IMG/VR virus record: IMGVR_UViG_3300033997_000243
Coordinates: 124,001-188,000 of that record
Length of the DNA stretch: 64,000 bases
Strand: one strand, 5' to 3'
Part shown: positions 55,447 to 64,000 of the stretch, one piece after another
Layout: the number at the start of each line of letters is the position of its first letter
How positions within the stretch are numbered: the stretch's first letter is position 1
Notes under the pieces: model-generated
What the model saw: only the letters and a program-made list of their open reading frames with translations
Told to the model about the DNA's origin: nothing
The model's database searches: none
Position numbers and translations under genes: made by a program

Positions 55447-57666
55447 TTAGTTTCCCTTAACCGGCAAATGTTCTCCAATACGCGCTATCCATAATACACC
55501 GTCAATGATTTTGAAGTGAACTTGAATAGTAGCATCTTCACTGCGACGAGTACCAAGCGTTAAATGCTGGATAAAAGTTTGCGGCTTTCCTTCAACATTA
55601 AATACACGCATTGCACTCAATACTTTGTTAGTCATTACAACTTCGCTTTCGTTGGCTTTGTATTTGTTGCCAAGAATATCCATCGCTTCTGAATCAGGAA
55701 TACCTGAAGTGATTGCTTGAAAGTAAGGCCCACACAAACGAACCAACATTTTTAAAAGTTTACGTGGATGGCGATACGTATTGCTTTCCAGATTCGACAT
55801 ATCCAGAAAGCGAGTGGCCGGAAACATTTCTTTGATGATTGTAACTACATCACACAAAGTTGGTTCATCCGTTAACGCATTTAATGTTGCATCCGTATAT
55901 TTGGCAACAACAATACTTTCTTGCGTTTCGTGTTTCTTGCTAAGCTTGTTTTTGAGATCCGCTATTTCAAGCAACAGATCTTTATTCTCAAGAAGTACCA
56001 ATTGAAGTTCATCAGTTTTTTCCGTAGAAACTTCTTTTGGATCTTCTGATTTCAAAACATACTTTTCAGCAATCAACACGTATTCGTTGGCGCTAACAAC
56101 CAAAGTATCTATCCATGATTCTACTCGCATTACAGACAAAGCAAGTGAATCCGAACAATCCACCATTTCCACAATAATATCTTGCTTGTGTGCAACGTCT
56201 TTAGCGGCGGCCAGAGTAGCAGTCAATTCGCTAAGACGTTTATCAGACTCAAGTGCTTTGCTGAAGTGCTCCAAGAAAAGTCGTTCAGATTGTGCGTCAG
56301 ACTTTCCTAAAGATTCATCTGTAACCCGAAGTTCGATAGGGCCACGAATTTCAGTTAACAACTCTTCACCGCGAGAAGGATCAAGTTGCAGACTTTCTAC
56401 GTATTCGATCTGAAGTTTGATGTTCGCATGTTTTGCCTTCAGGTTTTCCATTGTCTGAGTTAAAAGGTTATTTACTTCTCCACTCTTTTCAATGTCGGCC
56501 AAGTGTGAATATGCACTTGACAGATTTTCGGTTATGGCCTTGAAGTCACTTATCAAAGTTTTCTTGGCCGTTTCATCCAGACCAAAGTAAGACCGCAAAT
56601 CAACTTTATCCAGAAGCGCAAACTTTTTCTTGGCTTCCAAAAGTCTATCAAGTTGTTCATCAATTTCTTCATCAATAAACTTCAGGCCGCAATCGGCAGC
56701 AACTTCAAAAAGAACTCTGTCAACTTCACCAAAGTCAAAACCTTTGGTTCTGGCTTCCAGCATTTCTTTTGAGTTACCCAACTTTCCAATTACAGTGCGT
56801 TCATCTAATTGAGGCCAATTACGAACGTAGAAAGCCCAAATAGAAAACGTACAGGTAAATGTTGAGCTAATAAATGCGAGGAAAAGTAAACACGCATTCA
56901 ACCTGTTTAACTCAGTATTTTCATCGTGAGTTTTACACTCTTCGATCAAATACTCAAAATAAAAGGCCGCAGCGTTAACCATTTGTTTGCATGTATTATA
57001 TTCGCGCAAAGGCAACATATTGAAAAGCGAATTAATAAAGCTGGAATTAGCTTTCAAAGTTTTTGCTTCAGCGTATTCAGGCAACTTAGGCCAGCCTAAA
57101 ATATTTATGGCTGCTCTCAACATTCTCATTGACCATGCGTAATTCCATTTATCCGCAGATCTTTTTAATGGAACGGCAAACTGCATAAAGAACAAACAAT
57201 CTTCTTTGGTCTGCAATTCAGATTGATTACGAGCATGTCTTGGATAGCCGCCAACTGTCATCATTTCGTCAATCAAACGAATCGGCGCTTTACTATCCGC
57301 AAGAACACCAAGTTCTTTCATCAGTTTAAAAAAGTTGATCTGTTTTGGATACTCACCAAAATAAAATCTTGGGAAAGCAGCGGTTGCCACAATCTTTGAC
57401 ATCAGTTCGTCATTTTCCTCAGACGTAACAACAAGATGTGCGTACTTATCCGTGTTATGTTCGTAAGGAATTGAAAACAATGTAGGATCTTGAATACACT
57501 GTTTAAAGTTGCTGAGTAAAAGTTTGATTCGATTTTTGCGTACAGCCTCTTCAGGATCTTTTCCTGAAAACAAATCGATAACTTCTATAGAAACACCACT
57601 TTCTTGCAATGACTTAACATCTAAGCCTTTGCTGCGTAGAAGATCTAACGTAGCTTTAGAATCCAT
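55447..57666 (-). CDS. large coiled-coil protein with C-terminal RelE/ParE-like domain
   Basis: Ends RVFNVEG..QTFIQHLTLG....TIQVHFKI..GVLWIARIGEHLP; central heptad-rich region. Confidence 0.55.
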   Translation of the reverse strand: MDSKATLDLLRSKGLDVKSLQESGVSIEVIDLFSGKDPEEAVRKNRIKLLLSNFKQCIQDPTLFSIPYEHNTDKYAHLVVTSEENDELMSKIVATAAFPRFYFGEYPKQINFFKLMKELGVLADSKAPIRLIDEMMTVGGYPRHARNQSELQTKEDCLFFMQFAVPLKRSADKWNYAWSMRMLRAAINILGWPKLPEYAEAKTLKANSSFINSLFNMLPLREYNTCKQMVNAAAFYFEYLIEECKTHDENTELNRLNACLLFLAFISSTFTCTFSIWAFYVRNWPQLDERTVIGKLGNSKEMLEARTKGFDFGEVDRVLFEVAADCGLKFIDEEIDEQLDRLLEAKKKFALLDKVDLRSYFGLDETAKKTLISDFKAITENLSSAYSHLADIEKSGEVNNLLTQTMENLKAKHANIKLQIEYVESLQLDPSRGEELLTEIRGPIELRVTDESLGKSDAQSERLFLEHFSKALESDKRLSELTATLAAAKDVAHKQDIIVEMVDCSDSLALSVMRVESWIDTLVVSANEYVLIAEKYVLKSEDPKEVSTEKTDELQLVLLENKDLLLEIADLKNKLSKKHETQESIVVAKYTDATLNALTDEPTLCDVVTIIKEMFPATRFLDMSNLESNTYRHPRKLLKMLVRLCGPYFQAITSGIPDSEAMDILGNKYKANESEVVMTNKVLSAMRVFNVEGKPQTFIQHLTLGTRRSEDATIQVHFKIIDGVLWIARIGEHLPVKGN

Positions 57667-58933: not shown

Positions 58934-59197
58934 TTACGTTTCCAAATTGAATGTGTCTGAATTCCAAATCACTATTGTTTCCAGTACCTTCGGATCATCC
59001 GTAGAGCCTACAGAGAAACTCGCTCCTTTAGCACAATCAGGTAATTCAGCTGGAACCCAAGAAGCCAATCCGATTTTACGATACTCGCCAGCAGAAATAG
59101 AATCTGGAACAAGTCCAAGCTCTTTAATCTCTTGAGTAGTCATAAACTTTTTAGCATTCTGTTTGATATGATCGAAAGAAATAGAATCAGCTGTCAT
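58934..59197 (-). CDS. hypothetical protein
   Basis: Start moved to MTADSIS (GAGGA). Confidence 0.75.
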   Translation of the reverse strand: MTADSISFDHIKQNAKKFMTTQEIKELGLVPDSISAGEYRKIGLASWVPAELPDCAKGASFSVGSTDDPKVLETIVIWNSDTFNLET

Positions 59198-60176
59198 TTT
59201 TATCCTCACAGATGGCATCAAATTTGCCGTAAAAGAAATCGTGATCAATCGTTTTGTTTTGTCTGTTAATAGTTGCAAGAACAAACTTTTCTTTATTCAT
59301 CATTCTAAAAACACGGGTAACTGCGTCATACGAATTACGATTACTTTCTACAATTTTTTGTTTCGACTCTTCTGGCCCTTTGGTTTCATCAAGAACACGG
59401 TGCATAGGATGGGTAACTAAAGTTTCTACACCGTCAATATTTACGAGTCGTACAAAGTTAAATAAACGCTCAAAGACATTTAATTTATCTTCCAGCGTTT
59501 TGTGAAAGGCAATATGAGTTGCCCATTCAGGTATATAATTGTTATCAAACAAATATTGCAGGTCTGGAACAGAGTAAACACCGTAAGCAGATTTCTGTTC
59601 AAATCTAAATGGAGATCTTGTATACTCCAATTCTTTTAAATAAATACGTTCCAGAATGTTAAGGTGAGTGATCTGGAAAAGTCTACTTAAAATTTCGGTC
59701 TGGAACGAAAGATCTTTTTCGTGAGGGAAACCATCGTAACGAAGAATACTACTTAAGCGTTGTTTTCCGTTAGGTGTATCAACTTTCAACCCGTATAAAT
59801 CTTTTATTTCTCGCAACTTTGACCAACCAACGCCGAAATATTTGGTTAGTACATTCAAAATAGGTTTTGGAATAAGAGCTTCTTCTGCTTCATCTTCTTC
59901 CCTTGAAGAGACTAACACATCATGCTGCTCTGCAAAAAAGAATACTTCTAACGGACATTCGTTTATACCGAGTTGTGGATCTTCTTCACGATGCAACCAA
60001 CACAGAGGTCGAATAGAATAGATACCGTAATTTTTTGAAGGTGGTTTTAGTCCAGCACGTAATTCATCAAGTTTGAAAAGTTTAACACCTGCATCAGTTA
60101 AATCATTCAGCATTGAGTATGCGTTTGCCTGATTTTTTATTGCAGCTTGTTCAATACGAAAAATGTTTATATCCAT
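59187..60176 (-). CDS. hypothetical protein (paralog of 60729..61700)
   Basis: YSVPDL...WATHIAF...ERLF..VR.VNIDG....V.HP. Confidence 0.9.
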   Translation of the reverse strand: MDINIFRIEQAAIKNQANAYSMLNDLTDAGVKLFKLDELRAGLKPPSKNYGIYSIRPLCWLHREEDPQLGINECPLEVFFFAEQHDVLVSSREEDEAEEALIPKPILNVLTKYFGVGWSKLREIKDLYGLKVDTPNGKQRLSSILRYDGFPHEKDLSFQTEILSRLFQITHLNILERIYLKELEYTRSPFRFEQKSAYGVYSVPDLQYLFDNNYIPEWATHIAFHKTLEDKLNVFERLFNFVRLVNIDGVETLVTHPMHRVLDETKGPEESKQKIVESNRNSYDAVTRVFRMMNKEKFVLATINRQNKTIDHDFFYGKFDAICEDKNDS

Positions 60177-60220: not shown

Positions 60221-60742
60221 TTATCCGCCGTAACTTCCGCCGCTGTGTTTGTAGGCAGTTGCTCCAAATCCACCACGGTTTACAACTCCAGCAGCGGTGA
60301 CTGGAACAGAACTTGGATAAACTTTTGTGTGTCCAGTTTTGCTTGCTACCAGTTCATTTGTTGCTGTACGAAAGCCAGAAGGATCATCTTTTGAACGATA
60401 CAGCGGCTGGCTTTGTACAAAAGAACTTGCATTCGATGGATTGGTGGCACTTGACATATAGCCTGACATATACGGCATATAAACAAAGCCTCCACTACTT
60501 CCAGCGGTTGCCTCGCAATTTCCTGCGCCAAAATCTTCAGCGCAATCTTCTGGTTTTGTGTAACGAGGTGCAACTTGTTTGTGCAGTGCAGTTGCATCAG
60601 CAAAATCTTTCAAACACTTTTCTTTGTTGTAGTATGCAGCACATTGACCAACATTCTCAGACACTACTGGATAAACTGGTTCTTCACAGCCAGCCAATCC
60701 AGCTGTCATTAACACAAGAACAACTTTACTACTGCGCTTCAT
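60221..60742 (-). CDS. DUF1190 / YgiB-family lipoprotein
   Basis: MKRSS + lipobox LAGC; C..A...H...APRY....DC..DFG.GNC, MPYMSGYM, SQPLYRS, RGGFG and Gly/Ser tail. Confidence 0.88.
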   Translation of the reverse strand: MKRSSKVVLVLMTAGLAGCEEPVYPVVSENVGQCAAYYNKEKCLKDFADATALHKQVAPRYTKPEDCAEDFGAGNCEATAGSSGGFVYMPYMSGYMSSATNPSNASSFVQSQPLYRSKDDPSGFRTATNELVASKTGHTKVYPSSVPVTAAGVVNRGGFGATAYKHSGGSYGG

Positions 60743-61700
60743 AGCATTCCTCGAAAGTTTTGTTGTCATATAAAGGTTTAGCAATGTTTAAAAAGAATTC
60801 ATCCATTGTAACAAACTCATATTCATCTTTACGGAAAAAACGGATTGTACGTAAAGATTCTGTATAAGCAACTTTGTTGTGTTCAATAATTTCATTTGCT
60901 TCTCGCAAATACTCGCCATGAATTTTTGAGTTTTCAGTACAGCCAAGTTTACTAAGGTGCTGTGGCGAAGTATTTAAAAATGGTTTGAATTTTGGAACTG
61001 GATGGCGAACCATTAATTGTTCACCATCTAAATTTACGCAACGGGCAAGAACAAACATACGCTCACGTAAGTTTATTTCGGATTCATCAGATTTCATGTA
61101 ACCAACATGAGTGGCCCAAGGCAAAGAATACTGACTCACAATCAAGTCAGTAATATCCTCAACTGAATACTGACAATAATGTTCGGTACGCACTAATCGA
61201 GTTGGCGGTTCCATTGTACTGGATGGTTTGCGAATGAAAAGACGTTCAAGGAATTGAACACGTTGAGCCTTATTACAGAATTCAAAAAGTTGGTCAGGAT
61301 CTAAAACAGTTGAAAGTCGAACCATGACATCATGTTCAGGATGCAAGAAGTTTCCTAAATAAACAAGAACAGCACTTAGCTTGTTTTCATTGATTAGGCT
61401 GGCTGGAACTTTTTCTTCTTTTAGTGTTTTTAGAGCTTGCTTTGAAATGCCTGTTGTCATTGTTGACGGATCAACAGCATCAATTGTCAGTGCAAAGAAT
61501 ATCTTTTCAGTTTGCAACAACAGTTTATTAACTGAATCAGGAGTCTGTGGAAGTAAAGCACCCAACGAAAAGATTGCATTCGCGTACTGACTGACATTAA
61601 AGTTTTTACGCAAATCTTGTGCGCTAAAAAAATTAACACCAGCTGCTTGTAATATTTCACGAAGCTCTAAAGCGATTTCTGTTTTGGTTTTAATAGTCAT
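60729..61700 (-). CDS. hypothetical protein (paralog of 59187..60176)
   Basis: YSVEDI...WATHVGY...ERMF..AR.VNLDG....V.HP; GGAGG RBS. Confidence 0.9.
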   Translation of the reverse strand: MTIKTKTEIALELREILQAAGVNFFSAQDLRKNFNVSQYANAIFSLGALLPQTPDSVNKLLLQTEKIFFALTIDAVDPSTMTTGISKQALKTLKEEKVPASLINENKLSAVLVYLGNFLHPEHDVMVRLSTVLDPDQLFEFCNKAQRVQFLERLFIRKPSSTMEPPTRLVRTEHYCQYSVEDITDLIVSQYSLPWATHVGYMKSDESEINLRERMFVLARCVNLDGEQLMVRHPVPKFKPFLNTSPQHLSKLGCTENSKIHGEYLREANEIIEHNKVAYTESLRTIRFFRKDEYEFVTMDEFFLNIAKPLYDNKTFEECYEAQ

Positions 61701-61750: not shown

Positions 61751-62230
61751 TTAAACTAAAGCGAGTTCTTTTGCTTTGGTGATATTCCAACCAAGTTGTT
61801 CAAAATGCTCGGCCAGTGGAATAACTCCTTTACCTGAGTATAACTGTTTTGGAATTTCTCCACCACGGGAAACCAAGATCTCAAGCCAGTGATTTGGACA
61901 GACGACCGCCATAAATTTCTCCATAGCCAGCACAAGATCATCCGGTGTATTTGGATAATCTTCTTCCGTAAATTGAGGCGTATATATAGCATAGCCTTTA
62001 CCGCTATCTATCTTCTGACTTTCTTGAGTTCTTTTCGGTAATAACAATCGATAGTTTTTGTTATCACACAATTGAATAGATGCAAGTTCAAATATATTAC
62101 TGTAGCTAAATTTACCTTCGCTAACATTCATACTGTATACCAGTACGGAAATTTTTTGAGAGCAAACATCTACAATAATCTTTGGATAGTCATCTTCCTT
62201 GTATGGGTTCTTATCGTACTCAAAGTGCAT
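61751..62230 (-). CDS. hypothetical protein
   Basis: GAGGGA RBS. Confidence 0.85.
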   Translation of the reverse strand: MHFEYDKNPYKEDDYPKIIVDVCSQKISVLVYSMNVSEGKFSYSNIFELASIQLCDNKNYRLLLPKRTQESQKIDSGKGYAIYTPQFTEEDYPNTPDDLVLAMEKFMAVVCPNHWLEILVSRGGEIPKQLYSGKGVIPLAEHFEQLGWNITKAKELALV

Positions 62231-62270: not shown

Positions 62271-62732
62271 TTACTGTTGGTTCGTACCTTCAACACCGCG
62301 CTGTTTGCGATCTTGTGTTCGTGCATCCAACCAATGCAATGCACTTACAATATGTTGCAGCGCTTGTTCATTGGAATTACAAGCGAACGGGCCAGCTTGA
62401 AAACCACGAAGTCGGTGAGCGCATATTACCAAAAGATCTTCCATTTGAATTCCATTGACACCATGTTCGTTGATTGGGCCATTTTGGAAATTAATGGCGG
62501 CAAGACAAATACTTTGTTCACCGTTAAAAGCGCTTACACTGTAAACATGATTTGCATTACCGTGAGTTGGTAAATCGTCAGCAGTTACAATTGTGTACTC
62601 TGTTTTACGAATAGCTAAAACAGCTTGCTTTTGTTCGGCATCGTAATCTTCCATTGCCTGTGTAATCTTTTCAGCAGTAACTTCACCATCTACTGCAATG
62701 AAAATAGTTCCTTTTGTTGGATCATCACTCAT
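62271..62732 (-). CDS. tad1: Tad1-family anti-defence sponge protein (Thoeris gcADPR / cyclic-oligonucleotide binding)
   Basis: GNANHVY...INFQNGP...GVNGI..EDLL.I..HRLRGFQAGPFAC..NE.AL.HI..AL.WL..RT.DR..RGVEGT, the Tad1 signature recognised by eye. Confidence 0.85.
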   Translation of the reverse strand: MSDDPTKGTIFIAVDGEVTAEKITQAMEDYDAEQKQAVLAIRKTEYTIVTADDLPTHGNANHVYSVSAFNGEQSICLAAINFQNGPINEHGVNGIQMEDLLVICAHRLRGFQAGPFACNSNEQALQHIVSALHWLDARTQDRKQRGVEGTNQQ

Positions 62733-63199: not shown

Positions 63200-63991
63200 T
63201 TAAATTTTACAGGCTCCGCCTTCGCAATCTTCCATATCTTCATCTTGTGTTTGAATTTCGATTAAAACATCTGGTATTTCCAGAGAATCAAAATCAACTA
63301 AGGCAAAGTCATCGTCTTTACCTGCTTCAGCACTTAAAGGCAATGTTAATACAAGAACTGGTTGATTCATGTTCACATAAATGCCGAATTGTGCATTTAA
63401 GCATGAGTGAGTTTCACCATGATCGCTGACACTGTAACTACCTTCACGGGTAAATGTTCCTAAAGGAGTATCAGCTGGAAAAATGAAGATTTTGTTTCTC
63501 AGATTTTGCATGTGTTTGGGAAATAAGCCGTCTGTTACTAAAGACACTTCAATATCTTTAATTTTCAAATCAGCTATTTCACCATTCTGCACTAACAAAT
63601 GTTGGTTTTTCGGTTGAAAATGGTTAAACCAAGATTCTTGTTCACTGATAGATGAAAATCCAAGTTCACCAGCCAGCATAATAAATTCTACGCTGTCCTC
63701 AAAATCATCTACTGATTTAATAGCTTCGTAAATAGCATCAGGGGTGAATTGTTTTTCAAGATTAAATTGGTGACTCGCACCATCCAATGTCCAAGACATT
63801 ACTCGATTTTCAAATCCAACCCCAATTTGCTTGTCAGCTTCTGCCTCAAGATGTTCATTCGACATAACTATAGAATCACTTCTCGTTGTAATAAAGCCGT
63901 TCAGCTTAACTCGCTTAAAGAATCGGCGCAACAAATTTGCAGGTTGATCCAAGTTATTCAATACGTTAGTTAAAACAGTAGTTTTGTCCAT
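63200..63991 (-). CDS. hypothetical acidic protein ending in an NrdA-like redox tail
   Basis: C-terminus QDEDMEDCEGGACKI; AGGTG RBS. Confidence 0.85.
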   Translation of the reverse strand: MDKTTVLTNVLNNLDQPANLLRRFFKRVKLNGFITTRSDSIVMSNEHLEAEADKQIGVGFENRVMSWTLDGASHQFNLEKQFTPDAIYEAIKSVDDFEDSVEFIMLAGELGFSSISEQESWFNHFQPKNQHLLVQNGEIADLKIKDIEVSLVTDGLFPKHMQNLRNKIFIFPADTPLGTFTREGSYSVSDHGETHSCLNAQFGIYVNMNQPVLVLTLPLSAEAGKDDDFALVDFDSLEIPDVLIEIQTQDEDMEDCEGGACKI

Positions 63992-64000
63992 TTCGCACCT

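What the first reader, a model, noticed from the sequence alone, without database searches (positions are those of the whole stretch)
63200..63991. Non-RNR protein carrying the class Ia ribonucleotide-reductase C-terminal redox tail (CEGGACKI)
Seen: a complete 263-aa ORF with its own RBS ends in an acidic linker plus DCEGGACKI. Known: E. coli NrdA ends DDGCESGACKI, and this Cx4C pair shuttles electrons from thioredoxin/glutaredoxin to the active site. The body has none of the NrdA motifs (no NLCxE, no LYY). Inference: a grafted tail that re-reduces RNR in trans, decoys RNR or thioredoxin, or couples a novel phage enzyme to the host thiol network.
Basis: partly seen in the sequence, partly recalled or inferred. 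Interest (0 to 1): 0.75.

Follow-up and report, generated by a model that had tools for sequence, protein, structure and literature searches.

The report
Capsid paralog with portable RNR tail
A jumbo phage with no ribonucleotide reductase of its own encodes a cut-down copy of its capsid protein fused to a roughly 40-residue acidic peptide that ends in the exact redox tail of bacterial ribonucleotide reductase, and the same peptide turns out to be an undescribed stand-alone mini-protein in hundreds of phages and some bacteria.

Summary
The ORF at 63200-63991 (minus strand, 263 aa, RBS present) ends in an acidic linker plus DCEGGACKI. That motif is the exact C-terminus of class Ia NrdA in many Gammaproteobacteria. 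The tail is invariant in homologs that are 55-62% identical, with only synonymous codon changes.

- **The tail is grafted.** It is the end of a portable, disordered, acidic module of about 40 aa. The same module exists as a free-standing 38-90-aa protein in at least 330 protein clusters, all annotated 'hypothetical'. These occur in PaBG/Alexandra/Y3-type and other phages, and in some bacteria.
- **Fusion history.** In related phage contigs the body (231 aa, no tail) and the module (45 aa) are separate neighbouring genes. Here they are fused.
- **The body is not an enzyme or an NrdA piece.** It is a diverged paralog of the phage's own HK97-fold major head protein, without a recognisable counterpart of its N-terminal part (hhalign 85%, E 6e-6; capsid matches in four of the five structure searches of the target model).
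- **RNR genes.** No module-bearing phage genome examined encodes NrdA, NrdB, NrdD or glutaredoxin.

The function is inferred, not shown. I favour a mimic aimed at class Ia RNR alpha and its thioredoxin/glutaredoxin relay, most likely a competitive modulator. Rivals are a trans-reductant booster, a general thiol or Fe-S shuttle, and a capsid-linked role.

The parts
63200..63991 (-). Whole 263-aa ORF (stop codon at 63200-63202): a capsid-paralog body fused to an NrdA-tail module
63996..64000 (-). Ribosome-binding site. The full motif is GAGGTG, whose first base lies just beyond the window end, 4 nt upstream of the ATG.
   Evidence: upstream sequence read from L188
63866..63991 (-). N-terminal segment, residues 1-42. 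Residues 1-35 are nearly invariant among the three full-length close homologs. It does not align to the capsid protein and is modelled at low confidence.
63332..63865 (-). HK97-fold capsid-like body, residues ~43-220. The core, residues 77-185 (63437-63763), aligns to positions 222-326 of PaBG-type major head proteins and shares the motif L[TV]TDG[FL].P[EK].
   Evidence: fold searches; sequence homology to the phage's own major head protein
63401..63403 (-). Cys197, the only body cysteine conserved in all five family members. The aligned capsid-protein position is Thr.
63203..63331 (-). Portable acidic disordered module, residues 221-263: 15 acidic and 2 basic residues out of 43. It contains the hydrophobic/acidic motif DFDSLEIPDVLIE, then a linker, then the tail. 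It is 63% identical to the free-standing 45-aa protein P0031.
   Evidence: (pLDDT 25-33)
63203..63229 (-). DCEGGACKI, the class Ia NrdA-type C-terminal Cys-x4-Cys-Lys-Ile redox tail (Cys256, Cys261)

Best explanation
Architecture (shown).
- The protein is a chimera. Residues ~43-220 are a diverged paralog of the phage's own HK97-fold major head protein. It has no recognisable counterpart of the first ~150 capsid residues (N-arm and E-loop region).
- Residues ~221-263 are a portable, intrinsically disordered, acidic module that ends in the class Ia NrdA redox tail CE[GS]GACK[IL].
- The module is the constant element. It exists as a free-standing 38-90-aa protein in many phages that lack RNR and in some bacteria.
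- In the closest related phage contigs the body homolog and the module are separate neighbouring genes. In this lineage they are fused, which implies they act together.

Mechanism (inferred).
- The module imitates the flexible C-terminal arm of NrdA. It is therefore recognised by that arm's natural partners: the NrdA active-site cysteine pair, and thioredoxin or glutaredoxin.
- In about a third of module families the upstream hydrophobic/acidic motif also resembles the NrdB C-terminus, which docks beta onto alpha. The peptide then looks like a bivalent ligand of RNR alpha.
- I commit to this reading: a competitive modulator, most likely an inhibitor or decoy, of class Ia RNR belonging to the host and to rival RNR-encoding phages. 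It is carried only by phages that do not depend on an RNR of their own.
- The capsid-derived body would serve as an oligomerising scaffold that presents several tails.
- The direction of the effect (block or boost) is the weakest step.
For: Tail identity and selection:
- The tail is identical to genuine NrdA tails.
- It is under protein-level purifying selection.
- It is retained in diverged wastewater relatives.

Portability of the module:
- In two IMG/VR scans most tail hits that are not NrdA are short acidic ORFs, including named Erwinia, Dickeya, Klebsiella and Raoultella jumbo phages.
- The census gives 330 clusters at E<=0.01. Of the best 120, 104 end in CEGGACKI.
- PHROG families 14561, 24014 and 38753 are of unknown function.
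- The same tail is fused to an unrelated Phage_gp49_66 domain in L031.

Fusion (Rosetta stone): in L197 the order is P0005 (231 aa, no tail), a 131-aa gene, then the 45-aa module P0031, in a region syntenic with the target. L196 keeps the module but lacks the body.

Body is a capsid paralog:
- Foldseek, VIA-align, AFDB and ESM-Atlas hits are almost all HK97 capsid or encapsulin proteins.
- The family profile hits the phage's own phrog_2522 major head protein.
- hhalign against 35 capsid proteins gives 84.9% probability, E 6.4e-6, over 104 columns.

Link to RNR:
- 0 of 12 complete module-bearing phage records have NrdA.
- 0 of 13 complete records have NrdD, NrdB or Grx.
- No viral contig carries both an NrdA and a module hit.
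- An NrdB-like octapeptide is enriched: 7 of 23 quasi-independent module families at p<0.05 against 1.15 expected, binomial 9e-5.
- In L194 the module sits two genes after an NrdB whose C-terminus ...FADMDL resembles the module's ...LNDMEI.
Against: - No direct evidence of binding: the NrdA + module complex prediction returned 'no answer'.
- The target's own upstream motif is not significantly NrdB-like (p=0.5).
- Keeping both cysteines fits a redox-competent shuttle at least as well as an inhibitor.
- A 319-kb phage without RNR should need host RNR for its dNTP supply, which argues for boosting rather than blocking.
- Bacterial copies sit in non-RNR contexts: the Neisseriaceae isc operon, and beside flavin reductases.
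- Their sequence is not matched to the resident NrdA tail, which is CAGGACKI or CAGGACKL.
- The absence of RNR was not compared with a background sample of phages.
- The structure models are poor (pLDDT 52 and 42). The P0005 model gave only partial support.
- Transcription is not shown.
Confidence: 0.4

Rival explanations
1. Trans-acting reductant (booster). The free or fused tail is reduced by host thioredoxin or glutaredoxin. It then re-reduces the active-site disulfide of host NrdA in trans. This would raise the turnover of the only RNR available to an RNR-less phage.
For: - Both cysteines, the Glu after the first Cys, and the Lys-Ile end are kept almost without exception. That is what a working redox arm needs.
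- The phage has no RNR, Trx or Grx yet must replicate 319 kb.
- From established enzymology (my knowledge, not tested here): re-reduction of E. coli NrdA is thought to limit steady-state turnover.
Against: - A booster would help RNR-encoding phages too, yet module and NrdA never co-occur on the viral contigs seen.
- The NrdB-like docking motif in a third of families would compete with beta and so inhibit.
- The native tail is already tethered at high local concentration.
Confidence: 0.2
2. General dithiol or sulfur shuttle unrelated to RNR. The acidic Cys-x4-Cys peptide would be a small carrier that thioredoxin or glutaredoxin can reduce. It would serve persulfide or Fe-S chemistry (IscS-IscU) or other thiol-dependent steps. 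NrdA and the module would merely share a redoxin-recognition tail.
For: - In 11 Neisseriaceae loci the 42-aa ORF lies between iscS and iscU, about 70 bp upstream of iscU.
- The Thalassolituus copy follows a CysJ-like diflavin reductase, and the Moraxella copy follows an OYE flavin oxidoreductase.
- The module tail is more conserved than the resident NrdA tails.
Against: - The isc context is a single lineage.
- Another chromosomal family sits after a CvfB-like gene with no redox link.
- It does not explain the NrdB-like motif enrichment, the NrdB neighbour in L194, or the absence of RNR genes in module phages.
Confidence: 0.15
3. Capsid-linked role. The paralog co-assembles with, or binds to, the major head protein, for example as a vertex-type or decoration-type subunit or as an assembly factor. 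Its tail would then make or break disulfides, or recruit host thioredoxin, at the procapsid. Alternatively the truncated capsid copy is a decoy for capsid-sensing host defences.
For: - The body is homologous to the C-terminal half of the phage's own capsid protein.
- T4 gp24 is a precedent for a capsid paralog with a structural role (my knowledge).
- The neighbouring gene in L001/L002 carries an Acb2/Tad1 hairpin domain, which suggests an anti-defence neighbourhood.
Against: - The gene lies about 110 kb from the structural module, among small genes of unknown function near a thymidylate synthase.
- The related contig L196 lacks the body altogether.
- Most module carriers have no such body.
- The capsid protein has only two cysteines, neither at a conserved partner position.
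Confidence: 0.1
4. Ribosomally synthesised peptide (RiPP) precursor. The acidic FxLD-like leader would be followed by a Cys-containing core that is modified after translation, as one automatic UniRef label ('FxLD family lantipeptide') suggests.
For: - The UniRef name on P0062.
- The hydrophobic/acidic motifs superficially resemble RiPP leader boxes.
Against: - No NCBIfam hit, including no lanthipeptide model.
- 111 of 120 cores have no Ser or Thr in the last nine residues, so no lanthionine is possible.
- No modification enzymes appear in any neighbourhood examined.
- The core is identical to a working enzyme tail.
- Here it is fused to a 220-aa folded domain.
Confidence: 0.02

Closest known systems
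C-terminal redox tail of class Ia ribonucleotide reductase alpha (NrdA; E. coli Cys754/Cys759)
   Same: Identical terminal octapeptide (CEGGACKI, or CESGACKI in some relatives), preceded by a disordered acidic linker, at the extreme C-terminus.
   Different: It is not attached to an RNR barrel. It is free-standing or fused to unrelated domains, and it is encoded by genomes without any RNR. It is more conserved than the NrdA tails of the bacteria that also carry a chromosomal copy.
NrdB C-terminal peptide, the classic competitive inhibitor of alpha-beta association in class I RNR
   Same: About a third of module families carry an octapeptide like DD[FL]xD[FM][ED]L, for example LDFDDFEL.
   Different: The motif is internal, not at a free C-terminus. 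It is absent or degenerate in the target (DFDSLEI, p=0.5) and in the Neisseria type.
Yeast Sml1, Spd1, Hug1 and Dif1: small disordered protein inhibitors of RNR that compete with the R1 C-terminal CX2C arm (from my knowledge)
   Same: Small, disordered proteins that plausibly act on the large subunit in competition with its redox arm.
   Different: No sequence relationship. The module copies the arm itself, including both cysteines. It is bacterial or phage in origin, and inhibition is not shown.
HK97-fold major capsid proteins of PaBG-type jumbo phages, their paralogs (e.g. T4 gp24 versus gp23), and encapsulin shell proteins
   Same: The body aligns to the P- and A-domain half of these proteins by sequence profile and by fold. 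Its size is encapsulin-like.
   Different: No counterpart of the N-terminal ~150 capsid residues was recognised. It is accessory (absent in L196) and not encoded in the structural module. It has no encapsulin or capsid Pfam hit, and it carries a C-terminal redox tail that I have not seen described for any capsid protein.
PHROG families 14561, 24014, 38753 and 20277 (unknown function)
   Same: These are the free-standing tail-module proteins. The target's last ~40 residues align with them.
   Different: They are small proteins with no assigned function. The target itself scores below the PHROG thresholds because 85% of it is the capsid-like body.

Membership tests
Class Ia RNR large subunit (NrdA) | Ten-stranded alpha/beta barrel with catalytic cysteines (Pfam PF02867, Ribonuc_red_lgC) | tested here: not met
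   No Pfam hit for the protein at E<=1. No PF02867 match anywhere in the 319.5-kb genome.
Class Ia RNR large subunit (NrdA) | C-terminal disordered arm ending in Cys-x4-Cys | tested here: met
   The ORF ends in DCEGGACKI, identical to 103 genuine NrdA C-termini. Residues 221-263 have pLDDT 25-33.
Free-standing NrdA-tail module proteins (PHROG 14561/24014/38753; the 330 clusters) | Highly acidic, about 40-60 aa, with a hydrophobic/acidic motif, a linker, and then [DEG]CE[GS]GACK[IL]-stop | tested here: met
   Residues 215-263 align with 15 such proteins. They are 63% identical to P0031 over 38 aa and 44% identical to the P0067 region.
Free-standing NrdA-tail module proteins | Encoded as an independent small gene | tested here: not met
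   Here the module is fused in frame to a 220-aa body. It is separate in L196, L197 and L198.
HK97-fold major capsid protein superfamily | Fold similarity over the P- and A-domains | tested here: met
   VIA-align Z 9.6 to lambda gpE, with 19 chains at Z>=8, all of those shown being capsid proteins. Foldseek top hits have probability 0.99. AFDB clusters are named capsid or head protein. ESM-Atlas gives 10 of 10 capsid families, TM 0.45-0.50. Caveat: model pLDDT is 52.
HK97-fold major capsid protein superfamily | Detectable sequence homology to a bona fide capsid protein | tested here: met
   HMMER E 6e-4 to the phage's own phrog_2522 major head protein. hhalign against 35 homologs gives 84.9% probability, E 6.4e-6.
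HK97-fold major capsid protein superfamily | N-arm and E-loop; assembly into capsomers or shells | tested here: inconclusive
   By alignment register the target starts at about capsid residue 150. Residues 1-76 do not align. Assembly cannot be tested with these tools.
Encapsulin shell proteins | Encapsulin sequence family (Pfam Linocin_M18 type) and a cargo gene with a targeting peptide next door | tested here: not met
   No Pfam hit. Neighbours have no recognisable cargo. The fold match to encapsulins is only Z 7-8.
FxLD / lanthipeptide RiPP precursors | Precursor model hit, Ser/Thr plus Cys in the core, modification enzymes nearby | tested here: not met
   No NCBIfam hit. No Ser or Thr in the core of 111 of 120 members. 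No such enzymes in the neighbourhoods examined.
Sml1-type RNR inhibitors (functional class) | Binds the RNR large subunit and lowers its activity by competing with the C-terminal arm | not testable with these tools
   The complex prediction gave 'no answer'. This needs biochemistry.

The most novel reading that the evidence does not exclude
The capsid-derived body still oligomerises into capsomer-like rings or an encapsulin-like shell. That would display many NrdA-type tails and form a multivalent platform. The platform would capture host RNR alpha and/or thioredoxin and glutaredoxin. The phage would thereby sequester or relocate the host's dNTP-making machinery. More broadly, free NrdA-tail peptides would be a previously unrecognised class of RNR regulators used by both bacteria and phages.
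Probability: 0.12. Interest if true: 0.9.

Novelty: categorically new. Interest (0 to 1): 0.8.

Why it matters
Ribonucleotide reductase is the bottleneck of DNA precursor supply. Several recently described defence systems sense dNTP changes caused by phage RNR (bioRxiv 10.64898/2026.10.27.754916).

If the reading is right, three things follow:
- There is a widespread, conserved mini-protein that copies the enzyme's electron-delivery arm, and often the beta-subunit docking peptide as well. No paper in the searched library mentions it, and the protein and phage family libraries that hold its members give them no function.
- It would be the first bacterial or phage counterpart of the eukaryotic Sml1-type RNR regulators, and a clear case of short-motif mimicry by phages.
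- The target shows that such a motif can be bolted onto a recycled capsid protein. That would be a new use of the HK97 fold and a natural 'Rosetta stone' linking two otherwise anonymous phage genes.

It is directly testable, because cultured phages (Erwinia Alexandra and Y3, Dickeya AD1, Klebsiella FBKp24) and Neisseria carry the stand-alone form.

Tried and rejected
- **Nearby 739-aa ORF (55447-57666) as a tail-less NrdA:** rejected. It has no RNR domain or motifs.
- **Split NrdA:** rejected. The genome has no RNR domain.
- **Whole-protein similarity searches:** megablast and tblastn against GenBank phages found nothing. The search of 1.84 billion representatives found only 3 relatives. Extra scans of metagenome and viral contigs found only the phage's own copy.
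- **Language-model atlas search of the body:** uninformative.
- **Sequence searches against PDB chains:** nothing for the module or for the family profile.
- **Complex prediction of NrdA(1-737) with residues 215-263:** 'no answer'. I do not use it either way.
- **Exact matching of module tail to host NrdA tail:** not found in the bacteria that carry a chromosomal module copy. Neisseria, Thalassolituus and Moraxella NrdA end in CAGGACK[IL], while their modules keep CEGGACKI. Both G and S variants occur in phages of one host, Erwinia amylovora.
- **All small ORFs as prophage genes:** rejected for Neisseriaceae, where the ORF is in the isc operon.
- **Independent fold check with the P0005 model:** the model was too poor (pLDDT 42). 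The PDB search gave noise, and the Atlas gave 6 of 10 capsid families.
- **PF05065 (HK97 capsid model):** it misses even the real capsid protein of this phage.
- **Read mapping:** no proof of transcription.
- **Whole 390-kb L194 record:** could not be searched for NrdA.

Full report
**1.

The ORF at 63200..63991 on the minus strand encodes 263 aa and ends ...QTQDEDMEDCEGGACKI. A GAGGTG ribosome-binding site lies 4 nt before the ATG.

The window is bases 124001-188000 of a complete 319,518-bp virus record with terminal repeats and 37.6% G+C. All long ORFs in the window are on one strand.

E. coli-type NrdA does end ...DDGCESGACKI. The exact octapeptide CEGGACKI is the C-terminus of genuine NrdA in 103 of 120 bacterial genome hits.

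This is the only ORF in the genome with the motif. The protein has no Pfam, PHROG, NCBIfam or PADLOC hit.

**2. The tail is under selection.**

Only four relatives exist in collections of 5.8 and 1.84 billion proteins:
- P0002 and P0003 (58% and 55% identity, full length);
- P0004, a C-terminal fragment (62%);
- P0005 (27%, 231 aa), which has no tail.

The three tailed relatives have the last nine residues identical, and the preceding DVLIEIQTQ is nearly so. Among the target and the two full-length relatives, the last nine codons differ at 7, 5 and 3 codons, all synonymous. Wastewater relatives keep exactly these codons and diverge immediately upstream.

**3. The tail is the end of a portable module.**

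I back-translated CEGGACKI and scanned IMG/VR. This gave 31 loci, of which only two are NrdA. The others, apart from the phage's own copy, are ORFs of about 40-130 aa, each ending in an acidic stretch plus the tail. The CESGACKI scan gave more of the same beside real phage NrdAs.

Named carriers include:
- Erwinia phages Alexandra, Y3 and the pEa_SNUABM series;
- Dickeya phage AD1;
- Klebsiella phages FBKp24, Centimanus and Miami;
- a Raoultella phage.

All are annotated 'hypothetical protein'.

A profile of 16 such ORFs retrieves 330 protein clusters at E<=0.01. Among the best 120:
- median length is 50 aa;
- 31% of residues are Asp or Glu;
- tail variants are CEGGACKI 104, CEGGACKL 7, CQGGACKI 4, CESGACKI 1 and CEGGSCKI 1.

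PHROGs holds them as unknown-function families 14561, 24014 and 38753. In L031 the same tail is fused to an unrelated Phage_gp49_66 domain. No paper in the searchable library contains either octapeptide.

**4. Rosetta-stone evidence.**

The free-standing 45-aa protein P0031 is 63% identical to target residues 227-263. It lies in phage contigs (L196-L198) that share five or six flanking genes with the target locus, among them a thymidylate-synthase homolog.

In L197 and L198 the tail-less body homolog P0005 is a separate gene. It is followed by a 131-aa gene and then the module. L196 keeps the module but has no body gene. So the module is the constant element, the body is accessory, and the target lineage fused them.

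**5. The body is a capsid-protein paralog.**

The AlphaFold2 model is weak: pLDDT 52, reaching 60-86 for residues 60-175, with residues 221-263 disordered. Even so, four of the five structure searches of the model return almost only HK97-fold capsid or encapsulin proteins:
- Foldseek against PDB: top probabilities 0.99;
- VIA-align: Z 9.6 to lambda gpE, 19 chains at Z>=8;
- AFDB clusters: named capsid or head protein;
- ESM-Atlas: 10 of 10 capsid families, TM 0.45-0.50.

The earlier Atlas lookup that used its stored model of this protein found no capsid match.

Sequence evidence is independent of the model:
- The family profile finds one other place in the phage's own genome, a 374-aa ORF at 75,223-76,347. 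That ORF is phrog_2522 'major head protein' with E 2e-82.
- The ORF is 44% identical to the head proteins of Pseudomonas phage PaBG and of the Erwinia jumbo phages. That capsid protein is known to be HK97-fold (PMC7412058).
- Profile-profile comparison of the two families gives 84.9% probability and E 6.4e-6 over 104 columns, target 77-185 against capsid 222-326.
- A MAFFT alignment extends the similarity further.

By register the target corresponds to about capsid residues 150-374, so it has no recognisable counterpart of the N-arm and E-loop part. It is not the virion capsid gene. The only structure-based support from the distant homolog's model is partial.

**6. Link to RNR.**

The phage encodes none of the following:
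- class I/II RNR alpha;
- NrdB;
- NrdD;
- thioredoxin;
- glutaredoxin.

Across other module-bearing phage records:
- 0 of 12 complete genomes have PF02867;
- 0 of 13 have NrdD, NrdB or Grx;
- no viral contig had both an NrdA and a module hit.

The one exception in kind is L194, where the module lies two genes after an NrdB. That NrdB's C-terminus resembles the module's own hydrophobic motif.

I scored the pre-tail region against a matrix built from 33 host NrdB C-termini. Of 23 quasi-independent module families, 7 exceed composition-preserving shuffles at p<0.05, against 1.15 expected (binomial 9e-5). Examples are LDFDDFEL and SFLDDMEL. The target itself does not exceed them (p=0.5).

**7. Complications.**

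The module is not only viral. In 11 Neisseriaceae loci the 42-aa ORF lies between iscS and iscU. Other chromosomal copies follow a CysJ-like diflavin reductase, an OYE flavin oxidoreductase, or a CvfB-like gene.

In these bacteria NrdA ends in CAGGACKI or CAGGACKL while the module keeps CEGGACKI. The module is therefore an old family of its own, not a fresh copy of the resident nrdA end.

The complex prediction with E. coli NrdA gave no answer. Read mapping did not show transcription.

**8. Interpretation.**

Shown:
- a chimeric architecture;
- a portable tail module;
- gene fusion of two neighbouring genes;
- a capsid-derived body;
- the absence of RNR genes in the module-bearing phage genomes examined.

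Inferred: the partners are those of the NrdA arm, namely the NrdA active site and thioredoxin or glutaredoxin.

I favour an RNR-alpha-directed competitive mimic for three reasons:
- module and NrdA are mutually exclusive;
- many modules also copy the beta docking peptide;
- small disordered RNR inhibitors that compete with the R1 arm are known in yeast (my knowledge).

A possible benefit is the shut-down of host or rival-phage dNTP synthesis, or evasion of defences that sense dNTP surges.

The main counter-arguments are the retention of both cysteines and the dNTP needs of a 319-kb phage. Both favour the booster rival. The isc-operon copies keep a general thiol or Fe-S shuttle alive. The role of the capsid-like body as a multivalent scaffold is speculation.

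**9. Novelty.**

I found no description of free-standing or transplanted NrdA tails, or of a capsid paralog carrying one. The library is limited to open-access papers and preprints.

Noticed in passing
L101:4277-4405 (-) and ten further Neisseriaceae loci (L017, L036, L039, L064, L065, L074, L093, L106, L127, L128): A conserved 42-aa acidic ORF ending in CEGGACKI lies inside the isc operon, between iscS and iscU and about 70 bp upstream of iscU. Public records annotate it only as hypothetical.
   Followed up: partly
L017 (IMGVR_UViG_2541047228_000006): This 'viral' contig carries iscR-iscS-iscU-iscA-hscB at 90-99% identity to Neisseria. At least this end of it is bacterial chromosome, not phage.
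   Followed up: partly
L194:4038-6129: On a 390-kb metagenomic contig, an RNR small subunit (NrdB, ending ...DDFADMDL) is followed by a 146-aa gene and then a 42-aa tail module containing ...LNDMEI. No NrdA lies within the 12 kb seen, and the full record could not be searched.
   Followed up: partly
window 61751-62230 (-): The 159-aa gene is missing in some relatives. Contigs from two runs join 61748 to 62270/62271 with about 16-18 other letters in between, a presence/absence polymorphism.
   Followed up: no
window 60729-61700 (-) and 59187-60176 (-): Two neighbouring genes of 323 and 329 aa are paralogs (27% identity over 197 aa, E 1e-17). Neither has a family hit. They flank a DUF1190/phrog_3739 protein with a lipoprotein-like start (60221-60784).
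   Followed up: partly
window 62271-62732 (-): This 153-aa protein (phrog_2428) matches the C-terminal part of a 379-aa protein in L001/L002 that carries a precomputed Acb2/Tad1 hairpin hit. That suggests an anti-defence gene two genes downstream of the target. The window's own copy gave no such Pfam hit.
   Followed up: partly
L188:6302-7561 (-) = genome 192302-193561, just outside the window: A 419-aa thymidylate-synthase homolog whose Pfam match is split into two stretches, which suggests an insertion. It is conserved 4 kb upstream of the target in L001, L002 and L196.
   Followed up: no
L201:5223-6347 (+) = genome 75223-76347: The phage's major head protein (phrog_2522) is 44% identical to those of Pseudomonas phage PaBG and Erwinia phage pEa_SNUABM_32. 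This places the uncultured subsurface/wastewater phage in the PaBG/Lu11/AD1/Y3/Alexandra jumbo clade.
   Followed up: partly
L102:100-1998 and L110:375-1716: The chromosomal module copies in Thalassolituus and Moraxella sit directly downstream of flavin-dependent reductases: a CysJ-like diflavin reductase and an OYE-family oxidoreductase.
   Followed up: no
window 55447-57666 (-): A 739-aa ORF conserved in L001/L002 (740 aa) has no family hit at all. It is NrdA-sized but unrelated to RNR.
   Followed up: partly
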